Under the pieces are notes generated by a model. The model did not search any database, was not told the origin of the DNA, and saw only the letters and a list, made by a program, of their open reading frames with translations. Shown here one piece after another: positions 11,916 through 22,757 of a stretch of DNA of 64,000 nucleotides. Source of the stretch: Ostrea edulis (taxonomy: Eukaryota); assembly GCF_947568905.1 (NCBI RefSeq), contig NC_079169.1, positions 82,460,001 to 82,524,000 of the forward strand, in the 5' to 3' direction. Position 1 is the stretch's first letter. The number at the start of each line of letters is the position of its first letter. A program made the translations under genes and the position numbers.

Positions 11916-13170
11916 TTATCTGGAGTATGTACTATTCGCAAATGACATTAAAGTACTCTCTCTGGACCATTCTCCAGGCAAGATGTCCTCAGACTCATTA
12001 GCGAAACTAAGAAATGAGCTGGATGAGGAAATGTTGGTATTGCTTCTCGGGTTTTCATACTCTGTAATTCGATGAGTAGATTTTTCAGAGTTATTCATTC
12101 TTGACTGACCCATTTTGGAACTTTTGCCAGATAATATGCTGGATGTGGAGATATTTGAGTTGCCGCGAGCAGAGCTTACTAAACCCATTCTGGAAGGAAG
12201 AGGTGTGGGAGAGCTTACTGGATGTTGTGATGTGTTGTGAATTTCACTGTCACTCTTGATAGGTTTTCTTTGTCCGTGGTGTTTGCCAGAAGATTCTGCG
12301 GATCGACATCTGTTGAGAGATTTCAGATGAGATGATTTTTTATGATGATTGGATTTTTCTTCATATTCACGATGACTTGCTGAGTTTGTACCCAAAATAT
12401 GATTCTGTATTTCCATTCTGCATTCCTGGCAGATGGCTTTGGGAAGTTTAGCTCTATGATCCAAATGTACTTGAAGTTCATTTACTCTCTTGAACATGTC
12501 TTTCTTCTCGGTCGTAAGCTTCTCAATGTTTTCGCGCAGTCTTTGATTCTCAATTTCTTTTGTATCAATTTGATTTTTAAATCGAACTTGTTCTTTCTGA
12601 TAGAAGTCAGAATTTTCTACTATTCGCTTATTTAGGTCCGTAATTGTTTCTGAAAGGTCTGCATTTTTGCTAAGTAGTTCCCCCATCTTTGATTTGTTGT
12701 CATCGTAGCTATGTAGGAGTTTTCTGAAATTTTCTACAAAACTGAGCTTTTCACCTGTTGCACAGCCTAACTTCTGTTCAGTTTCACTAAGTAAATCTTC
12801 TAGCTTTTTCAAACCCAGTTCTGTATCCTTGATCTTATTTTCAGTCATGCTTAACTTTCCGAGCAGTAACTGATTCAATTTTTGACTTGGGGACGTTTGG
12901 ATCTGTTTTTTGTTGGGTCGCCGTCTGACCATGGAGAAACTTGTACTTTGCCTATCAAATTTCTCTAACTGTCCATGTGAAGTAGCAGTATGGTTCACAT
13001 GGTCATTGTCTGTCAGCTTTGATTTTATGTATTGATCCCTCTCTGGAAGCTTAGATCTCATTTGAGGTTTGTTTTCACGTCTTGGAGAGAAAGTCAGTGA
13101 TCGTCCTTCTGCCTTTCGTTTGCCTGTTTTATTGTCATTCATTTCTGAAATCGCTTCTCCACTTGACAAT
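11916..13170 (-). CDS. G2 main exon: coiled-coil protein paralogous to G1, no CARD found
   Basis: ORF of about 417 codons with acceptor ctatctacag at 13171. It has a coiled-coil core, an S-rich tail with two SFAN motifs and local similarity to G1. The first in-exon ATG is at 13142. Confidence 0.85.
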
Positions 13171-18376: not shown

Positions 18377-19258
18377 TTAATAATCTAAAGATGTTTGTCG
18401 CAACATCACATAGTTACTGCCCTGATCACTGAATTGCAAATTCTCCACGTTGTTTATCTGCAGTTGGATAGACCGTGCTGTAAAACCCAGTGCTGATGGT
18501 GGTCCATCAGTGGAATTTAAATAATCCAGTCTGGTGCTTAGTGGAACAACTCGGGGATAATTTCTCTCATCAGGAGGGTCGTGATCTGGGCTCCCCAAGG
18601 TCTCCATTGCTTCAGGGTTGAAAGAGGAGTGGGGAGTTTCTTCAGAACTGGGTTCAACAAGATTGAGATGCATTAGTCTCTCCTTGACCTTTTCATCCAC
18701 GAGGTCCCGGATTATTGTATCCTCGTTCTTGTTAATCATTTTAATCTCCTCAGTTAAGAAAGCAATCTTGTCATTCAAGTCATCAACAGTCTTTTGAAAA
18801 TCATTTTCCATTTTTTGAAAGTTTTCTGTTAGGTTGGTCTTTTCTTTCTCAAATCCCATTTTGAAAATAGTGCATGATTTGTGAAGTGGAAGTTTTTTGC
18901 TGTTCACATAATTTCTTGTACATTCAAGTTCTTTCACCATTAATTCCATGTTAAGAGTTTCCTGGTTAAACGAAGAATCTTCACCAAGCACTAAATATGA
19001 AAGCTTTTCACAGGATTGTTGCAGTGCTTCGATTCTGTGGTCTAAATGTTTTATTTTTGCTCGGAGGTCCACCTGGCAGTGTGGGTCAGCTTTCTGTTTT
19101 GAGTTCAATTCCTTCAGGACATTGTTCATCTTTTTCACATAATGTTCATTTACTGTTTTCTCCAGCAGTAAGGTGTCTGTAAAAGCTTGATACCCACCTT
19201 TTTTCTTCTTCAATATTTCAACCAATTTGGGATTTCTGTCGCAACTGTCTTGCAAGCG
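18377..19258 (-). CDS. G3 exon 2: CARD second half + coiled coil + C-terminal RHIM-like motif (full protein 338 aa)
   Basis: Acceptor ttttttcattttacag|CGC. The exon starts RLQDSCDRNPKLVEILKKKKGGYQAFTDTLL, continues as coiled coil and ends RSIQLQINNVENLQFSDQGSNYVMLRQTSLDY*. Confidence 0.85.
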   Translation of the reverse strand, partial: RLQDSCDRNPKLVEILKKKKGGYQAFTDTLLLEKTVNEHYVKKMNNVLKELNSKQKADPHCQVDLRAKIKHLDHRIEALQQSCEKLSYLVLGEDSSFNQETLNMELMVKELECTRNYVNSKKLPLHKSCTIFKMGFEKEKTNLTENFQKMENDFQKTVDDLNDKIAFLTEEIKMINKNEDTIIRDLVDEKVKERLMHLNLVEPSSEETPHSSFNPEAMETLGSPDHDPPDERNYPRVVPLSTRLDYLNSTDGPPSALGFTARSIQLQINNVENLQFSDQGSNYVMLRQTSLDY

Positions 19259-19312
19259 CTGTAAAATGAAAAAAAAAAAATCACTTGTTATGGAAGCAGA
19301 AGTTAAGATAAG

Positions 19313-19930
19313 GATGGGGGTATTGTTTATAGTCTGTCCTTTTGTCTATATTTTTTACTTTAACCTTGGTCATAACTTTTGAGCTAGATCTATACAAGAC
19401 TTCATACATGGGGAAAATTAAAGGTCATGGTTCAAGGTCAAATTTGCCAATTTAAACAGGGGCATCATGTTTCTGTTTTTTTGCATGAAAGTTCAAGTAA
19501 GCTTTTCATATCAGCTTTTGTCGGTTGTCTGTCCATCCATCTGTCTGTAAACTGTTCATGTTTTCATCTTTTTCTCTAAAACCATTAGGTCAATTTCAAT
19601 CCAACTTGCAACAAATCGTTTTTGAATGAAGGGGATTCATGTTTGTTCAAATGAAGGGTCATGCCTTCTTCAGAGGGGATGTAATCATGAAAAGGCAAAA
19701 ATTGGGCAGGGTCATCTCAAGAACCACTGGACCATAAAAGTTAAAATTTACATGGCAGCTTCCAGACACAGTGCAGATTTAAGTTTGTTAAGATCATGGC
19801 TCATGGGGATAGGGTGGGGCCACAATAGCGGATCAAAGTTTTACATTCAGATATATTGGGGAAATTTTTTTTACAATCTTCTCGAGAATCACTGGGCCAG
19901 AAAAGTTGAAATTTACATGAAAGTTTCCTG
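19313..19930 (+). mobile_element. Degraded HINE-like fragments (Cg170-family core) in the G3 intron
   Basis: Motifs gtccatccatctgtctgtaaac, gtcaatttcaatccaacttgc, atagtgcagattcaagtttg-like and gggccacaatag are shared with the element at 22758-23488. Confidence 0.55.
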
Positions 19931-20410
19931 ACATTCACATAGAGTTTTAATTACGTAATATATATATATATATATATATACGAAGTATGAATAATATCCT
20001 TTGTCGGCAATCTTAACTTGCTTAATAGCATTGTGATACACACACCATTTATGTAACATTTGTTTGAGGAAGGGTGCCGATGTTAACACCTATTTACAAA
20101 CAAATCATTATTCAGTGATCTGTGTAAGCTTGGATCATTAAATTTTTTTACGCAAGCCATTATACTGTTTAAAGTGTGTATTTTGTATTCCGTTTGTCAA
20201 TAAAAATTTGTAAAGAAATTAAACGTACTGGTAGAAATCAGTCTCATGTCCTCACCCTGCTTGATGTTCATAGGGCACCTGGAGAAAGGCGGGGATACTG
20301 ACATAGTGTAGGAAATAGGAGATAAATGGGAGGCAGTTTTGGATGTGCAATTCTGGGAACCTCCTGCTAATCTGGAAGATTCACTTGTACATTAAGAATA
20401 GCTTTATTAC

Positions 20411-20900
20411 TTTTTATACACCCGTCGAAGACGGGACGCATTATTGTATGGCTTCGTCCATCTGTCCGAACCGTAAGCTCCAGGATTTTACAACTGGGTA
20501 CATTCAATCATCATGATGAGAGGAAGATGCCTATTGTTTTTCAAGATCAGATGTCAAAGGTCAAGGGCGTAGTATCACTTAGTAGGAAAACTTTGTAGGC
20601 AGGATACAAAATGAACTGTAAGCTCCAGGATATTGCAAGTGGGTACATTTGATCAACATGATGAGAGGAAGATGTCTATCATTTTTCAAGGTCAAAGGTC
20701 AAGGTCACAGTATCACTTCGTAGGAAAACCTTCTAGGCAGTATACAAACTGAACTGTTGGGGCTAGGACCGTCAAACTTTGTACACATACACTTTATGCC
20801 AAGTGGAGGATGCCTATTGTTACTTAAGGTCAAGGTCGTAGTAGCAGAATGCAGACCGATTCGTTGGGGCAAGGACCATCAAACTAGGTACACATACATC
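20411..20900 (+). mobile_element. HINE-like element remnant
   Basis: Starts tttttatacacccgtcgaagacggg (hairpin) followed by gtccatctgtcc and repeated ttttcaaggtcaaaggtcaaggtca cores. Confidence 0.55.
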
Positions 20901-21160
20901 TTATGCCAACTGAAAAAATTACATGGAGAGTACATGATTTGTCTTGTTTTTACGATGCAAAGAAAGTATGTCACACCCAGATGATTGCTTATACTACTTG
21001 AAGCCAAGTTCTGCAAGTTGTGGTGTAAGAAAAACACCCTATATTAGCTTTTCACTGGCCTATTATGTACCGTTGGCAGTACTCTTGTTGAAGTGATAAT
21101 AATGCACAAAAAAACCTATTAAGTTTCTTTTTTAACGTCATGATACAATTATAGATTTAC

Positions 21161-21295
21161 TGTGAGATAATCTCTGTCGTGCCGAGTCAACATCCCTCGA
21201 GATTCAAGTCGCTGTAGAACACTTGATGACACTAACAGAGAGATCTTGATGTCCTTTGCACAGCGATTTAGAGTCCGTATCTCATTAGCTTCCAT
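21161..21295 (-). CDS. G3 exon 1: CARD first half (MEANEIRTLNRCAKDIKISLLVSSSVLQRLESRGMLTRHDRDYLT)
   Basis: Exactly 135 nt from the ATG to a phase-0 donor (ACA|GTAAAT). The acceptor ctctctgcag lies 1 nt before the ATG. Length and phase match the first exons of G4-G7. Confidence 0.75.
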
Positions 21296-22757
21296 TCTGC
21301 AGAGAGATACAAGTAAAACTCTGTAAAAGGACAGTAAAATTTGTCTACTTCAGTTTAATATGTTGCACAGATTTCAATGTTCAATTCAGAGTTTGAATTT
21401 TTTTTTAAAATTTTTTTTTTGGTAAAAGTATTTATCGCTTGTTATCAAATATGAAGATTTTATTGGATAGCAACTAGAAATTCACATTAGACAAGTTTCA
21501 ATATATCTAACTAGAAAACAATAAAGCATTTTGAAGATGAAAAAAACATTAGGTAAAGAAAACGTCAACAACAAATCAACACATATACAGAATACTGATT
21601 GAAATATACTAATTATAGACCATGCTTGTACTGTAGATTCAATTGATAGTTGTCTAGTGTAGGCTAATTCATGTAAAGAATAGAATTTTAAAAAATTCAC
21701 AGAATTCAGAATTTTTTCATTAGCTTTTGTTCATGATGTCTGTAAAACTGTACGTAACATATCTCAGCCCATAACTTGTACAGGGTATTTGGTAAGACAG
21801 TCAGCATAATGATATGATAGTATTGTGTTTTTTATAAATGTATAATACTAAAATTTTATCACCTCAGTTTTGACACATGGAACAGTAGCCTTCAGCTTGT
21901 GCATGATGTGTTAACACTCAAGACTATTTCAGCATATACATGCATGACATGCAAACCCAACACTGTCATATAAATACCCCCATAAGGTTCACTTGCAACA
22001 TGGGTATTTATTCAAAGTATTTTAATCATGGCCATAATGTAGAATTTCATACATTTATTCACACTTACCTGTGCTTGTCTGTGATGAGACACTTTTCCTG
22101 CACACTTGTAATTTCAATGTTATTGTTAGTTGATATATTTATAGCTCAATGTACATTAGATGAGCTGGAAGCTATTCCAAACCGCTACATTGAATGAACG
22201 TACCATAAATCTACTGGTAATCTTTATCTCAATATCAAATATTTCGTTGGCTTTAAATCATTTCAGACAATGATTTTGTAATGCTATTAGTCAATATGTA
22301 TATTTATAAACTTGGCACATTATTTATACTGTCATCTGTAAAAGGAGTAGATGATCCCTATTGATTGGTCAAGGGTCAATCCACCCTGGATTTTCATTAA
22401 ATTTAGTGGAAAAAAAATTTGAAAGTAGATTTCATTGTAGTAAACTTGTGCAATTACAAAGATGTAGATTATTGTTATTTGTTGGGGTTTTATTTCATCA
22501 AGTTTAAATTTATCTTTCCATGTTTATTTTATGGTGATTTTAAAATTGCTGCAAAACTATTCTGCCATTTTCTGTGACATGTGTATTCTAACTAGCGATC
22601 TACTATTCTAACTAATCCCGTCATAGAATGTCTTTCATACACTTTGGGGCCACTTCTTGTATGATTATGTCGTGTTTCTTGGACAATTTGTGGATGGAAC
22701 TATCTTTGCTTTGTGAATTACTACATTATATGGATGGAGCAGTTTGAAAATAGTACA

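What the first reader, a model, noticed from the sequence alone, without database searches (positions are those of the whole stretch)
18401..18472. G3 ends in a RHIM-like amyloid motif, giving a CARD-coiled-coil-RHIM architecture
The G3 tail SIQLQINNVENLQFSDQGSNYVML fits the RHIM register. Human RIPK3 has I-Y-N-C-S-G-V-Q-V-G-D-N-N-Y-L, and G3 has I-N-N-V-E-N-L-Q-F-S-D-Q-G-S-N-Y-V. The I, N, hydrophobic-Q-hydrophobic and downstream NY positions are kept, but the core is LQFS rather than (I/V)Q(I/V)G. It follows a Pro-rich disordered linker, as RHIMs usually do. RHIM and cRHIM motifs build signalling amyloids (RIPK1/RIPK3/TRIF/ZBP1; Drosophila PGRP-LC/Imd). Inference: G3 could bridge CARD filaments and amyloid signalling. 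NLQFS can also be read as a pLxIS-like motif.
Basis: partly seen in the sequence, partly recalled or inferred. Interest (0 to 1): 0.75.

Follow-up and report, generated by a model that had tools for sequence, protein, structure and literature searches.

The report
Oyster CARD adaptor's conserved RHIM-like tail
An expressed oyster gene encodes a small immune or cell-death adaptor (CARD domain, long helix, floppy linker) that ends in a conserved 24-residue strand-like motif; the motif looks like the amyloid-forming RHIM of human RIPK1/RIPK3 but fails every formal RHIM test run here.

Summary
The peptide SIQLQINNVENLQFSDQGSNYVML is encoded at 18401-18472 on the minus strand. It forms residues 308-331 of a 338-residue, two-exon protein. 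A spliced contig confirms the intron.

The architecture holds:
- CARD: AF2 pLDDT 92, best fold matches Apaf-1 and BCL10 CARDs.
- Long helices.
- A 16%-Pro linker that AF2 leaves disordered.
- The C-terminal motif.

The motif is real. It is a conservation island shared by paralogues in rock, cupped and pearl oysters, with the family pattern Φ-x-Φ-x-N-x3-Φ-Q-Φ-x3-G-x-N-Φ.

It is not a demonstrable RHIM:
- Pfam RHIM gives no hit at E≤10, while the hRIPK3 control scores 43 bits.
- No family member has the (I/V)Q(I/V/L/C)G tetrad.
- The fourth-position Gly is S, N or H throughout the family.
- Profile-profile similarity is marginal for G3 plus its orthologue (P=0.024; permutation p≈0.06) and absent for the family (P=0.13).

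An earlier apparent significance came from a segment I had hand-picked, and I withdrew it. The pLxIS reading is not conserved.

My verdict is a lineage-specific interaction motif that resembles RHIM only in layout. Amyloid function remains open at about 25%.

The scan already flagged neighbouring paralogues of this cluster (s1-268691, s1-268680).

The parts
21161..21295 (-). G3 coding exon 1: Met1-Thr45, the N-terminal half of the CARD
   Evidence: ORF and donor ACA|GTAAAT read directly. It is 80% identical to residues 1-45 of the Saccostrea echinata orthologue P0003. A spliced contig covers 21161-21299.
19259..21160 (-). Intron (GT..AG) carrying very high-copy interspersed repeats
   Evidence: X1 record 3 skips exactly this interval. 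Logan contig depth reaches 1e3-1e6 at about 19470-20040 and 20380-21180.
19100..19258 (-). Start of exon 2: residues 46-98, the C-terminal half of the CARD
   Evidence: The N-terminal 100-residue profile hits BCL10 CARD (E 3.8e-4) and Apaf-1 CARD (E 6.6e-4). The AF2 model has pLDDT 92 and six or seven helices. Foldseek top hits are all CARDs, led by Apaf-1 CARD at TM 0.80/0.86 and rmsd 1.8 A.
18659..19099 (-). Residues 99-245: long helical region, a presumed coiled coil
   Evidence: AF2 of the orthologue predicts helices 111-136 and 146-242 with pLDDT up to 94. Pfam gives only weak coiled-coil-type hits. The helix end (V[KR]ERL) is the best-conserved stretch, with pairwise identity about 0.6. 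Coiled-coil pairing itself is inferred.
18473..18658 (-). Residues 246-307: disordered linker (Pro 16%, Ser+Thr 21%, Asp+Glu 18%)
   Evidence: Composition. AF2 pLDDT is 30-43. Family pairwise identity is 0.07-0.27, with many indels.
18401..18472 (-). Residues 308-331: the conserved C-terminal motif SIQLQINNVENLQFSDQGSNYVML, which is the finding
   Evidence: Translation. It is a conservation island with identity 0.29-0.36. It is unchanged in a contig 4.4% diverged at the DNA level, while the linker changes.
18377..18400 (-). Residues 332-338 (RQTSLDY) plus the stop codon; poorly conserved

Best explanation
G3 is an expressed adaptor protein found only in oysters and pearl oysters.

Shown:
- An Apaf-1/BCL10-type CARD (residues 1 to about 98).
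- About 150 residues of long helix.
- A 60-residue disordered Pro/Ser/acid-rich linker.
- A 24-residue C-terminal motif that is the only well-conserved element of the C-terminal third.

Inferred: the motif is a family-specific, strand-forming recognition element. The CARD and the helices would cluster several copies of the protein. The clustered tails would then bind a partner by strand pairing. The partner could be a folded domain, or the equivalent tails of family members in a stoichiometric way.

The motif resembles RHIM in layout (two short hydrophobic-x-hydrophobic strands, a central Q, N-rich turns, a terminal N-aromatic-hydrophobic). It is neither a RHIM by definition nor demonstrably one by descent.
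For: - Gene and expression: the spliced contig joins 19258 to 21161.
- CARD.
- Helix and disordered tail.
- Conservation island at residues 306-330 against the linker.
- The motif is kept with pattern PHI-x-PHI-x-N-x3-PHI-Q-PHI-x3-G-x-N-PHI in clades that are only 30-40% identical overall.
- The motif is 100% kept in a contig that is 4.4% diverged, where the linker takes three substitutions and an insertion.
- A Logan variant changes only the variable position 314, N to I.
- RHIM membership tests were negative while their positive controls worked.
- Canonical, functional RHIM tetrads exist in a bivalve RIPK1 (PMC12119088), so 'the bivalve form of RHIM' is not a reason for the divergence.
Against: - No partner is known.
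- No copy of the motif was found in another protein architecture. The one attempt had almost no candidates and is uninformative.
- At 24 residues with three strand-like segments, the motif is longer than a typical docking motif. Its 33% N+Q content suits cross-beta assembly at least as well.
- The residues that deep mutagenesis finds essential for RIPK3 nucleation have hydrophobic equivalents in G3 (L311, I313, L319, F321, plus Q320). These are the aliphatic tetrad V450/I452/V458/V460 and Q459. In the same study, Gly substitutions mostly raise nucleation (bioRxiv 10.64898/2026.02.19.706818).
Confidence: 0.5

Rival explanations
1. The tail is a genuine, divergent RHIM-type functional amyloid motif. 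CARD and coiled-coil clustering would nucleate a three-strand cross-beta fold: strand 1 LQINN, strand 2 LQFS, strand 3 NYVML, with a turn two residues longer than in RIPK3. The fold would polymerise with family tails or with canonical RHIM proteins, linking CARD filaments to amyloid signalling.
For:
- G3 plus its orthologue give P=0.024. G3 against the mini-RHIM HMM gives p=0.049.
- Only 0.3% of shuffles of the last 45 residues match the upstream pattern, although that pattern was written after seeing the sequences.
- L at tetrad position 1 (LQIG) and F at position 3 (VQFG) are natural RIPK3 variants that remain active (PMC12119088).
- Insertions near the third strand and Gly substitutions mostly increase nucleation (bioRxiv 10.64898/2026.02.19.706818).
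- The motif sits in disordered flanks.
- Bivalves have a canonical RIPK1 RHIM (PMC12119088). A CARD+RHIM protein is annotated in a bivalve iridovirus, and its best bivalve match is a caspase-3/9-like protein (PMC12452177).
Against: - There is no PF12721 hit at E<=10 for any of 12 tails.
- Neither family profile (A3, or A6 even with the hand-picked segment) finds a RHIM chain in the PDB.
- The family-level profile comparison is not significant once the hand-picked P0020 segment is removed (P=0.13; permutation p 0.12-0.28).
- The 9-sequence tail HMM does not score hRIPK3 or hRIPK1 above shuffles.
- Fisher combination of the per-clade p-values gives about 0.2 (my arithmetic).
- The tetrad Gly is absent in all members.
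- No member has the (I/V)Q(I/V/L/C)G tetrad.
Confidence: 0.25
2. NLQFS is a pLxIS-like phospho-motif. A TBK1/IKK-type kinase would phosphorylate the Ser and recruit an IRF, which would make G3 a soluble MAVS-like adaptor (CARD, Pro-rich linker, pLxIS).
For: - A loose pattern (hydrophilic-[LV]-x-[ILFV]-S) fits G3, P0003, P0014 and P0025. P0025 fits the strict pattern as TLQIS.
- The layout resembles MAVS (my own knowledge, not tested here).
Against: - The Ser is N in P0004, P0005, P0006 and P0015, and H in P0029/P0060.
- Conservation spans about 20 residues, including a nearly invariant Q at the position that pLxIS leaves free.
- G3 has F where the pattern has I.
Confidence: 0.1
3. The motif is a leucine-rich nuclear export signal, or another common hydrophobic short motif.
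For: INNVENLQF fits the class 1b export-signal pattern. Five of nine tails have a pattern match that ends on the PHI-Q-PHI core.
Against: - The pattern is loose and common.
- P0004, P0005 and P0060 lack it at that position.
- It explains neither the conserved N, Q and G positions nor the downstream G-x-N-PHI.
Confidence: 0.07
4. The resemblance and the motif are chance, and the tail has no specific function.
For: By my rough arithmetic from typical residue frequencies, a single-sequence match to such a degenerate pattern is expected about ten times per proteome. The RHIM-likeness statistics are marginal.
Against: The motif is conserved across clades, is embedded in a fast-evolving linker, and is kept intact in a diverged allele or close relative.
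Confidence: 0.05

Closest known systems
RHIM of RIPK1/RIPK3/ZBP1/TRIF (Pfam PF12721)
   Same: - A motif of about 20 residues in a disordered region of an innate-immune adaptor.
- A PHI-x-PHI-x-N strand, three residues, a PHI-Q-PHI core, then N-aromatic-hydrophobic.
- The upstream spacing is identical to hRIPK3.
   Different: - No Pfam hit.
- The core is LQFS, not (I/V)Q(I/V/L/C)G, and the fourth-position Gly is missing in the whole family.
- There are two extra residues before NY.
- The similarity is not significant at family level.
Arthropod cryptic RHIMs (PGRP-LC/LE, IMD, shrimp SRB2)
   Same: These are degenerate RHIM-like motifs that fail mammalian consensus yet form amyloid and signal (PMC10268257). 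They are a precedent for functional non-canonical motifs.
   Different: Their only absolutely conserved residue is the fourth-position Gly (PMC10268257), and G3 and its relatives lack it. cRHIM sequences were not compared directly here.
BCL10 and Apaf-1 CARDs; CARD9-type CARD-coiled-coil adaptors
   Same: The CARD fold and the best sequence and structure matches. The CARD is followed directly by a long helix, as in CARD9.
   Different: - CARD9 (6n2m) and CARMA1 CARDs rank only 31st and 33rd (E about 1.1) and are absent from the sequence hits.
- There is no MAGUK region.
- The tail motif has no counterpart in BCL10 or CARD9.
CARD+RHIM protein BiIV1_006R of a bivalve iridovirus
   Same: A CARD combined with a RHIM-type motif in a bivalve setting. 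Its best bivalve match is a caspase-3/9-like protein (PMC12452177, supplement read).
   Different: That protein carries an annotated RHIM domain. No viral relative of the G3 family was found in IMG/VR. No homology to G3 was shown.
MAVS (CARD, Pro-rich region, pLxIS)
   Same: An N-terminal CARD, a Pro-rich linker, and a short L-x-PHI-S element near the C-terminus.
   Different: G3 has no transmembrane anchor, the Ser is not conserved in the family, and a long helix is inserted.
Fungal and bacterial amyloid signalling motifs (HET-s, PP, BASS)
   Same: Short terminal N/Q/G-rich strand motifs on cell-death adaptors. Kajava et al. linked them to RHIM (PMC4262963).
   Different: No Pfam hit to HET-s-type models for the oyster tails at E<=10. 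No receptor carrying a matching motif was found.

Membership tests
RHIM (PF12721; mammalian definition) | Scores at or above the Pfam gathering threshold (20 bits) | tested here: not met
   There is no RHIM hit at E<=10 for the G3 exon 2, its last 87 residues or its last 40 residues, nor for the tails of P0004, P0008, P0014-17, P0019, P0020, P0022, P0025 and P0029. The hRIPK3 25-mer control scores 43 bits, E 2.7e-11. Caveat: E<=10 over 24,736 models corresponds to p of about 4e-4, so weaker likeness is not seen by this test.
RHIM (PF12721; mammalian definition) | Core tetrad (V/I)-Q-(V/I/L/C)-G | tested here: not met
   G3 has L319-Q320-F321-S322. A regex scan finds the tetrad in none of 20 family proteins. 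Single L1 and F3 variants occur naturally and are active, but all tested variants keep the Gly (PMC12119088).
RHIM (PF12721; mammalian definition) | Upstream hydrophobic-x-hydrophobic-x-N strand at fixed spacing from the core | tested here: met
   L311-Q-I313-N-N315-x3-L319-Q-F321 aligns without gaps to hRIPK3 V-N-I-Y-N-C-S-G-V-Q-V. The same pattern occurs in P0003, P0004-6 and P0029/60.
RHIM (PF12721; mammalian definition) | Statistically significant profile similarity to bona fide RHIMs | tested here: inconclusive
   - G3 plus orthologue: hhalign P=0.024, permutation p 0.06-0.07.
- Nine-sequence family: P=0.13, permutation p 0.12-0.28.
- Tail HMM against hRIPK3, hRIPK1 and mRIPK1: p=0.34, 1.0 and 0.03. 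The positive control scores 21.9 bits, p<=0.0003.
- The RHIM side of the comparison was only three RIPK1/3 sequences verified against the PDB.
RHIM (PF12721; mammalian definition) | Lies in an intrinsically disordered region | tested here: met
   AF2 pLDDT is 30-43 over residues 250-330 of the orthologue. The linker is 16% Pro.
RHIM (PF12721; mammalian definition) | Forms amyloid and co-assembles with other RHIMs | not testable with these tools
   This needs ThT, EM, SDD-AGE or nucleation assays.
Arthropod cRHIM | Gly at the fourth core position, stated to be the only absolutely conserved residue (PMC10268257) | tested here: not met
   The fourth position is S in G3, P0003, P0014, P0016 and P0025. 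It is N in P0004-6 and P0015, and H in P0029.
CARD (death-fold superfamily) | Six-helix CARD fold with sequence-profile similarity to known CARDs | tested here: met
   - Profile of residues 1-100 against the PDB: BCL10 E 3.8e-4, Apaf-1 6.6e-4, RAIDD 0.053, and nothing else significant.
- AF2 pLDDT 92.
- The top 30 Foldseek hits are essentially all CARDs, best TM 0.80/0.86.
- Paralogue P0004 has a precomputed PF00619 hit.
- Note: Pfam hmmscan of P0003 alone does not reach E<=10 for PF00619.
CARD-coiled-coil family (CARD9/10/11/14) | A CARD specifically related to CARD9/CARMA CARDs, followed by a coiled coil | tested here: inconclusive
   The layout is similar, but the CARD9 and CARMA1 CARDs rank 31st and 33rd by fold and are missing from the sequence hits at E<=10.
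pLxIS motif (STING/MAVS/TRIF) | Hydrophilic-L-x-I-S with a conserved phospho-acceptor Ser | tested here: not met
   G3 has NLQFS, with F where the pattern has I. The Ser is replaced by N or H in 4 of 9 tails, and only P0025 fits strictly.

The most novel reading that the evidence does not exclude
The oyster and pearl-oyster CARD-helix family carries a Gly-less, RHIM-like cross-beta motif. CARD filaments or coiled-coil clustering would nucleate it into a functional amyloid. That would be a new class of metazoan amyloid signalling motif that physically couples death-fold polymerisation to amyloid polymerisation, possibly with paralogue-specific tail variants acting as separate channels.
Probability: 0.22. 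Interest if true: 0.8.

Novelty: new variant of a known kind. Interest (0 to 1): 0.4.

Why it matters
Functional amyloid signalling is known in three settings: vertebrate necroptosis and NF-kB (RHIM), insect and crustacean IMD signalling (cRHIM), and fungal and bacterial NLR systems. CARD filaments are a separate polymer system.

A protein that carries both a CARD and an amyloid-type motif would show how the two were coupled in a lophotrochozoan. It would also give oyster immunology, including responses to OsHV-1 and Vibrio, a new adaptor family to study.

The evidence here is more modest. It shows a real, uncharacterised, narrowly distributed adaptor family with a conserved C-terminal motif. 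Only 22 representatives were found among 1.84 billion proteins. The named members all come from Saccostrea, Crassostrea/Magallana and Pinctada; many hits carry no taxon. No searchable paper names these genes.

The evidence also shows that the RHIM label should not be applied on sequence grounds.

Tried and rejected
1. I first put the S. echinata P0020 segment TINIHNHGHFQMGGANAMD into the tail alignment A6, because it looked like a gap-free RHIM.
   - That gave hhalign P=0.002, permutation p<=0.004, and HMM p=0.008-0.05.
   - Aligning the C-terminal regions showed the segment is an insertion just after the helix. It is not the homologue of the tail.
   - Without it the signal disappears. I withdraw those numbers as circular.
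2. The ESM Atlas feature search with the tail gave no usable hit.
3. The word-index search restricted to the tail (P0003:289-330) had two candidates and found only itself. It says nothing about other architectures.
4. The IMG/VR scan for viral relatives, meant to reach the iridovirus CARD+RHIM gene, found none.
5. The family tail HMM against a six-frame translation of the window found no second copy of the motif.
6. The runs found were not on record as RNA. Only one contig, in a run whose RNA status is a guess, shows the splice. Expression level and conditions are therefore unknown.
7. The Liu et al. 2024 paper on a C. gigas RHIM-containing protein is cited in bioRxiv 10.64898/2026.02.19.706818 but is not in the library. 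I could not compare that protein.
8. Export-signal and TRAF-type motifs were considered. The export pattern fits only part of the family. A TRAF2-like SSEE in the linker, seen by eye, is not kept in paralogues.

Full report
**What is there.**
- The minus strand of 18377-18472 translates to SIQLQINNVENLQFSDQGSNYVMLRQTSLDY followed by a stop.
- It ends a long open frame at 18377-19258. That frame is preceded by a polypyrimidine tract and an AG acceptor.
- A 45-codon exon at 21161-21295 starts with ATG and ends at ACA|GTAAAT.
- Joined in phase 0, the two exons give a 338-residue protein.
- A 361-nt Logan contig in run X1 lays its bases 1-148 on 19111-19258 and its bases 149-287 on 21161-21299 (record 3). 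It skips exactly the predicted intron. The gene is therefore spliced as modelled and is present in a library that behaves like RNA, although the run's RNA status is a guess.
- A further 74 nt of that contig lie elsewhere, so an upstream untranslated exon exists.

**Architecture.**
- A profile of the first 100 residues of four family members finds BCL10 CARD (E 3.8e-4), Apaf-1 CARD (6.6e-4) and RAIDD CARD in the PDB sequence set. Nothing else is significant.
- AF2 on that alignment gives pLDDT 92. Foldseek returns almost only CARDs, with Apaf-1 CARD best at TM 0.80/0.86 and rmsd 1.8 A.
- AF2 of the full-length Saccostrea echinata orthologue (P0003, 70% identical over exon 2) predicts helices 111-136 and 146-242 with pLDDT up to 94. 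Residues 250-330 come out at pLDDT 30-43.
- The G3 linker (residues 246-307) is 16% Pro, 21% Ser+Thr and 18% Asp+Glu. The motif is 33% Asn+Gln.
- The description 'CARD, long helix, Pro-rich disordered linker, terminal motif' is therefore correct. Coiled-coil pairing of the helix is inferred, not shown.

**The family.**
- Word-index searches and one exhaustive profile search found only 22 representatives at E<=1e-3 among 1.84 billion proteins.
- Named members come from Saccostrea echinata, S. cucullata, Crassostrea virginica, Magallana gigas and Pinctada imbricata. All are annotated 'uncharacterized' or 'CARD domain-containing'.
- No searchable paper mentions their identifiers.
- A second, divergent member lies in this window (exons 28552-28731 and 27420-28286). 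It has a different conserved tail.
- Earlier agents of this scan described neighbouring paralogues of the same cluster (s1-268691, s1-268680). My results agree with theirs.

**The motif is real.**
- In an alignment of the C-terminal regions of ten members from distinct clades, pairwise identity is about 0.6 at the helix end. It falls to 0.07-0.27 through the linker and rises again to 0.29-0.36 over G3 residues 306-330.
- The shared pattern is PHI-x-PHI-x-N-x3-PHI-Q-PHI-[S/N/H]-x2-G-x-N-PHI.
- A contig from run X1 differs from the window at 13 of 297 bases and carries a 3-nt insertion. It changes the linker (three substitutions and one inserted residue) and the residue after the motif, but leaves the 24-mer unchanged.
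- A Logan variant changes only residue 314, N to I, which is the variable position of the pattern.

**Is it a RHIM?** Each test was paired with a control.
1. Pfam.
   - There is no PF12721 hit at E<=10 for G3 or for any relative's tail.
   - A 25-residue hRIPK3 peptide, verified against PDB 7DAC, scores 43 bits.
2. Tail profiles against the PDB.
   - Profiles of five or ten tails found no RIPK1 or RIPK3 chain at E<=10.
   - The RIPK3 peptide finds RIPK1 RHIMs at E 0.011-0.14.
3. Profile-profile comparison against three verified RIPK1/3 RHIMs (A7).
   - My first run gave P=0.002 and beat all 250 column permutations.
   - That alignment contained a P0020 segment I had chosen because it looked like a RHIM. 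One search showed the segment is an insertion next to the helix, not the homologue of the tail.
   - Without it the family gives P=0.13 (permutation p 0.12-0.28). G3 plus its orthologue give P=0.024 (permutation p 0.06-0.07). The rest of the family gives P=0.15.
4. HMM tests against composition-matched shuffles.
   - The nine-sequence tail HMM does not score hRIPK3 or hRIPK1 above their shuffles (p 0.34 and 1.0). Mouse RIPK1 gives p 0.03.
   - A RIPK1-only HMM scores hRIPK3 at 21.9 bits, p<=0.0003.
   - A mini-RHIM HMM scores G3 at p=0.049, and the other clades at 0.17-1.0.
5. Defining residues.
   - No member has the (I/V)Q(I/V/L/C)G tetrad.
   - The fourth position is S, N or H.
   - LQIG and VQFG are active natural RIPK3 variants, but every tested variant keeps the Gly (PMC12119088).
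   - In arthropod cRHIMs the Gly is described as the only absolutely conserved residue (PMC10268257).
   - A bivalve RIPK1 has a canonical, functional tetrad (PMC12119088). Divergence of the oyster tail therefore cannot be put down to a general drift of bivalve RHIMs.

**What keeps the amyloid reading alive.**
- The upstream half is in exact RHIM register.
- Deep mutagenesis finds an aliphatic tetrad (V450, I452, V458, V460) and Q459 essential for hRIPK3 nucleation. All of these positions have hydrophobic or identical equivalents in G3 (L311, I313, L319, F321, Q320).
- In the same study, Gly substitutions, loop deletions and insertions near the third strand mostly raise nucleation (bioRxiv 10.64898/2026.02.19.706818).
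- This mapping is inference from an alignment whose significance is marginal.

**Other readings.**
- pLxIS: the Ser is not conserved, and only one tail fits the strict pattern.
- Export signal: the class 1b pattern fits G3 and ends on the core in five of nine tails. It is loose and does not explain the polar conserved positions.
- Chance: excluded for the motif by its conservation, but not excluded for its likeness to RHIM.

**Verdict.**
- The motif is a genuine, conserved, lineage-specific element of an uncharacterised oyster CARD adaptor family.
- The RHIM label is not supported by any formal test, and a defining residue is missing.
- I rate a strand-type partner-binding element as most likely (0.5), a true amyloid or RHIM-type function at about 0.25, and the other readings lower.
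- The decisive evidence is biochemical.

Noticed in passing
window 27420-28286 and 28552-28731 (minus strand): This is a second, divergent member of the same CARD-helix family. It has an acidic linker and its own conserved tail (..SSIFINNRHPMSSQNVILIQKPRNVNIFS). That tail is kept almost unchanged in Saccostrea cucullata and Magallana gigas K1PME4. Pinctada relatives end ..YIINPTNVNIN[T/N].
   Followed up: partly
window 3869-5344 and 11916-13169 (minus strand): Two neighbouring coiled-coil ORFs end in Ser-rich tails that carry a repeated SFAN[S/E] element (EVSFANSS; FLSFANES and LMSFANST). They have no CARD and only weak coiled-coil Pfam hits.
   Followed up: no
window 33388-34023 (minus strand): A coiled-coil ORF ends in GIDIQISSDFI, a short I-Q-I-S element reminiscent of the family core. 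It could be a coincidence.
   Followed up: no
window 19470-20040 and 20380-21180 (G3 intron): Very high-copy interspersed repeats: Logan contig depth is 1e3 to 1e6 against about 30 for the exons. There are many rearranged joints typical of repeat families.
   Followed up: no
G3 residues 257-264 and 285-292 (window about 18602-18625 and 18518-18541): Two smaller conserved islands sit inside the disordered linker: [F/L]NP[E/D]xME[S/T] and LS-x-R-x-D-[Y/L]-L. They are shared with paralogues and may be further short motifs.
   Followed up: no
P0020 (Saccostrea echinata LOC133191548) residues 428-447: A 482-residue relative has an extra N-terminal coiled coil. Directly after the family helix it carries TINIHNHGHFQMGGANAMD, a gap-free match to the RHIM register that includes a fourth-position Gly. 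It scores p=0.003 against shuffles with the mini-RHIM HMM but has no Pfam RHIM hit. It is an insertion relative to the family, and its true C-terminal tail is degenerate.
   Followed up: partly
L001 (S. echinata JAVQLB010000023.1, 6336008-6357532): The orthologue P0003 lies inside the span of a large gene called on the opposite strand (1050-residue product that runs beyond the locus). It may therefore be nested in an intron.
   Followed up: no
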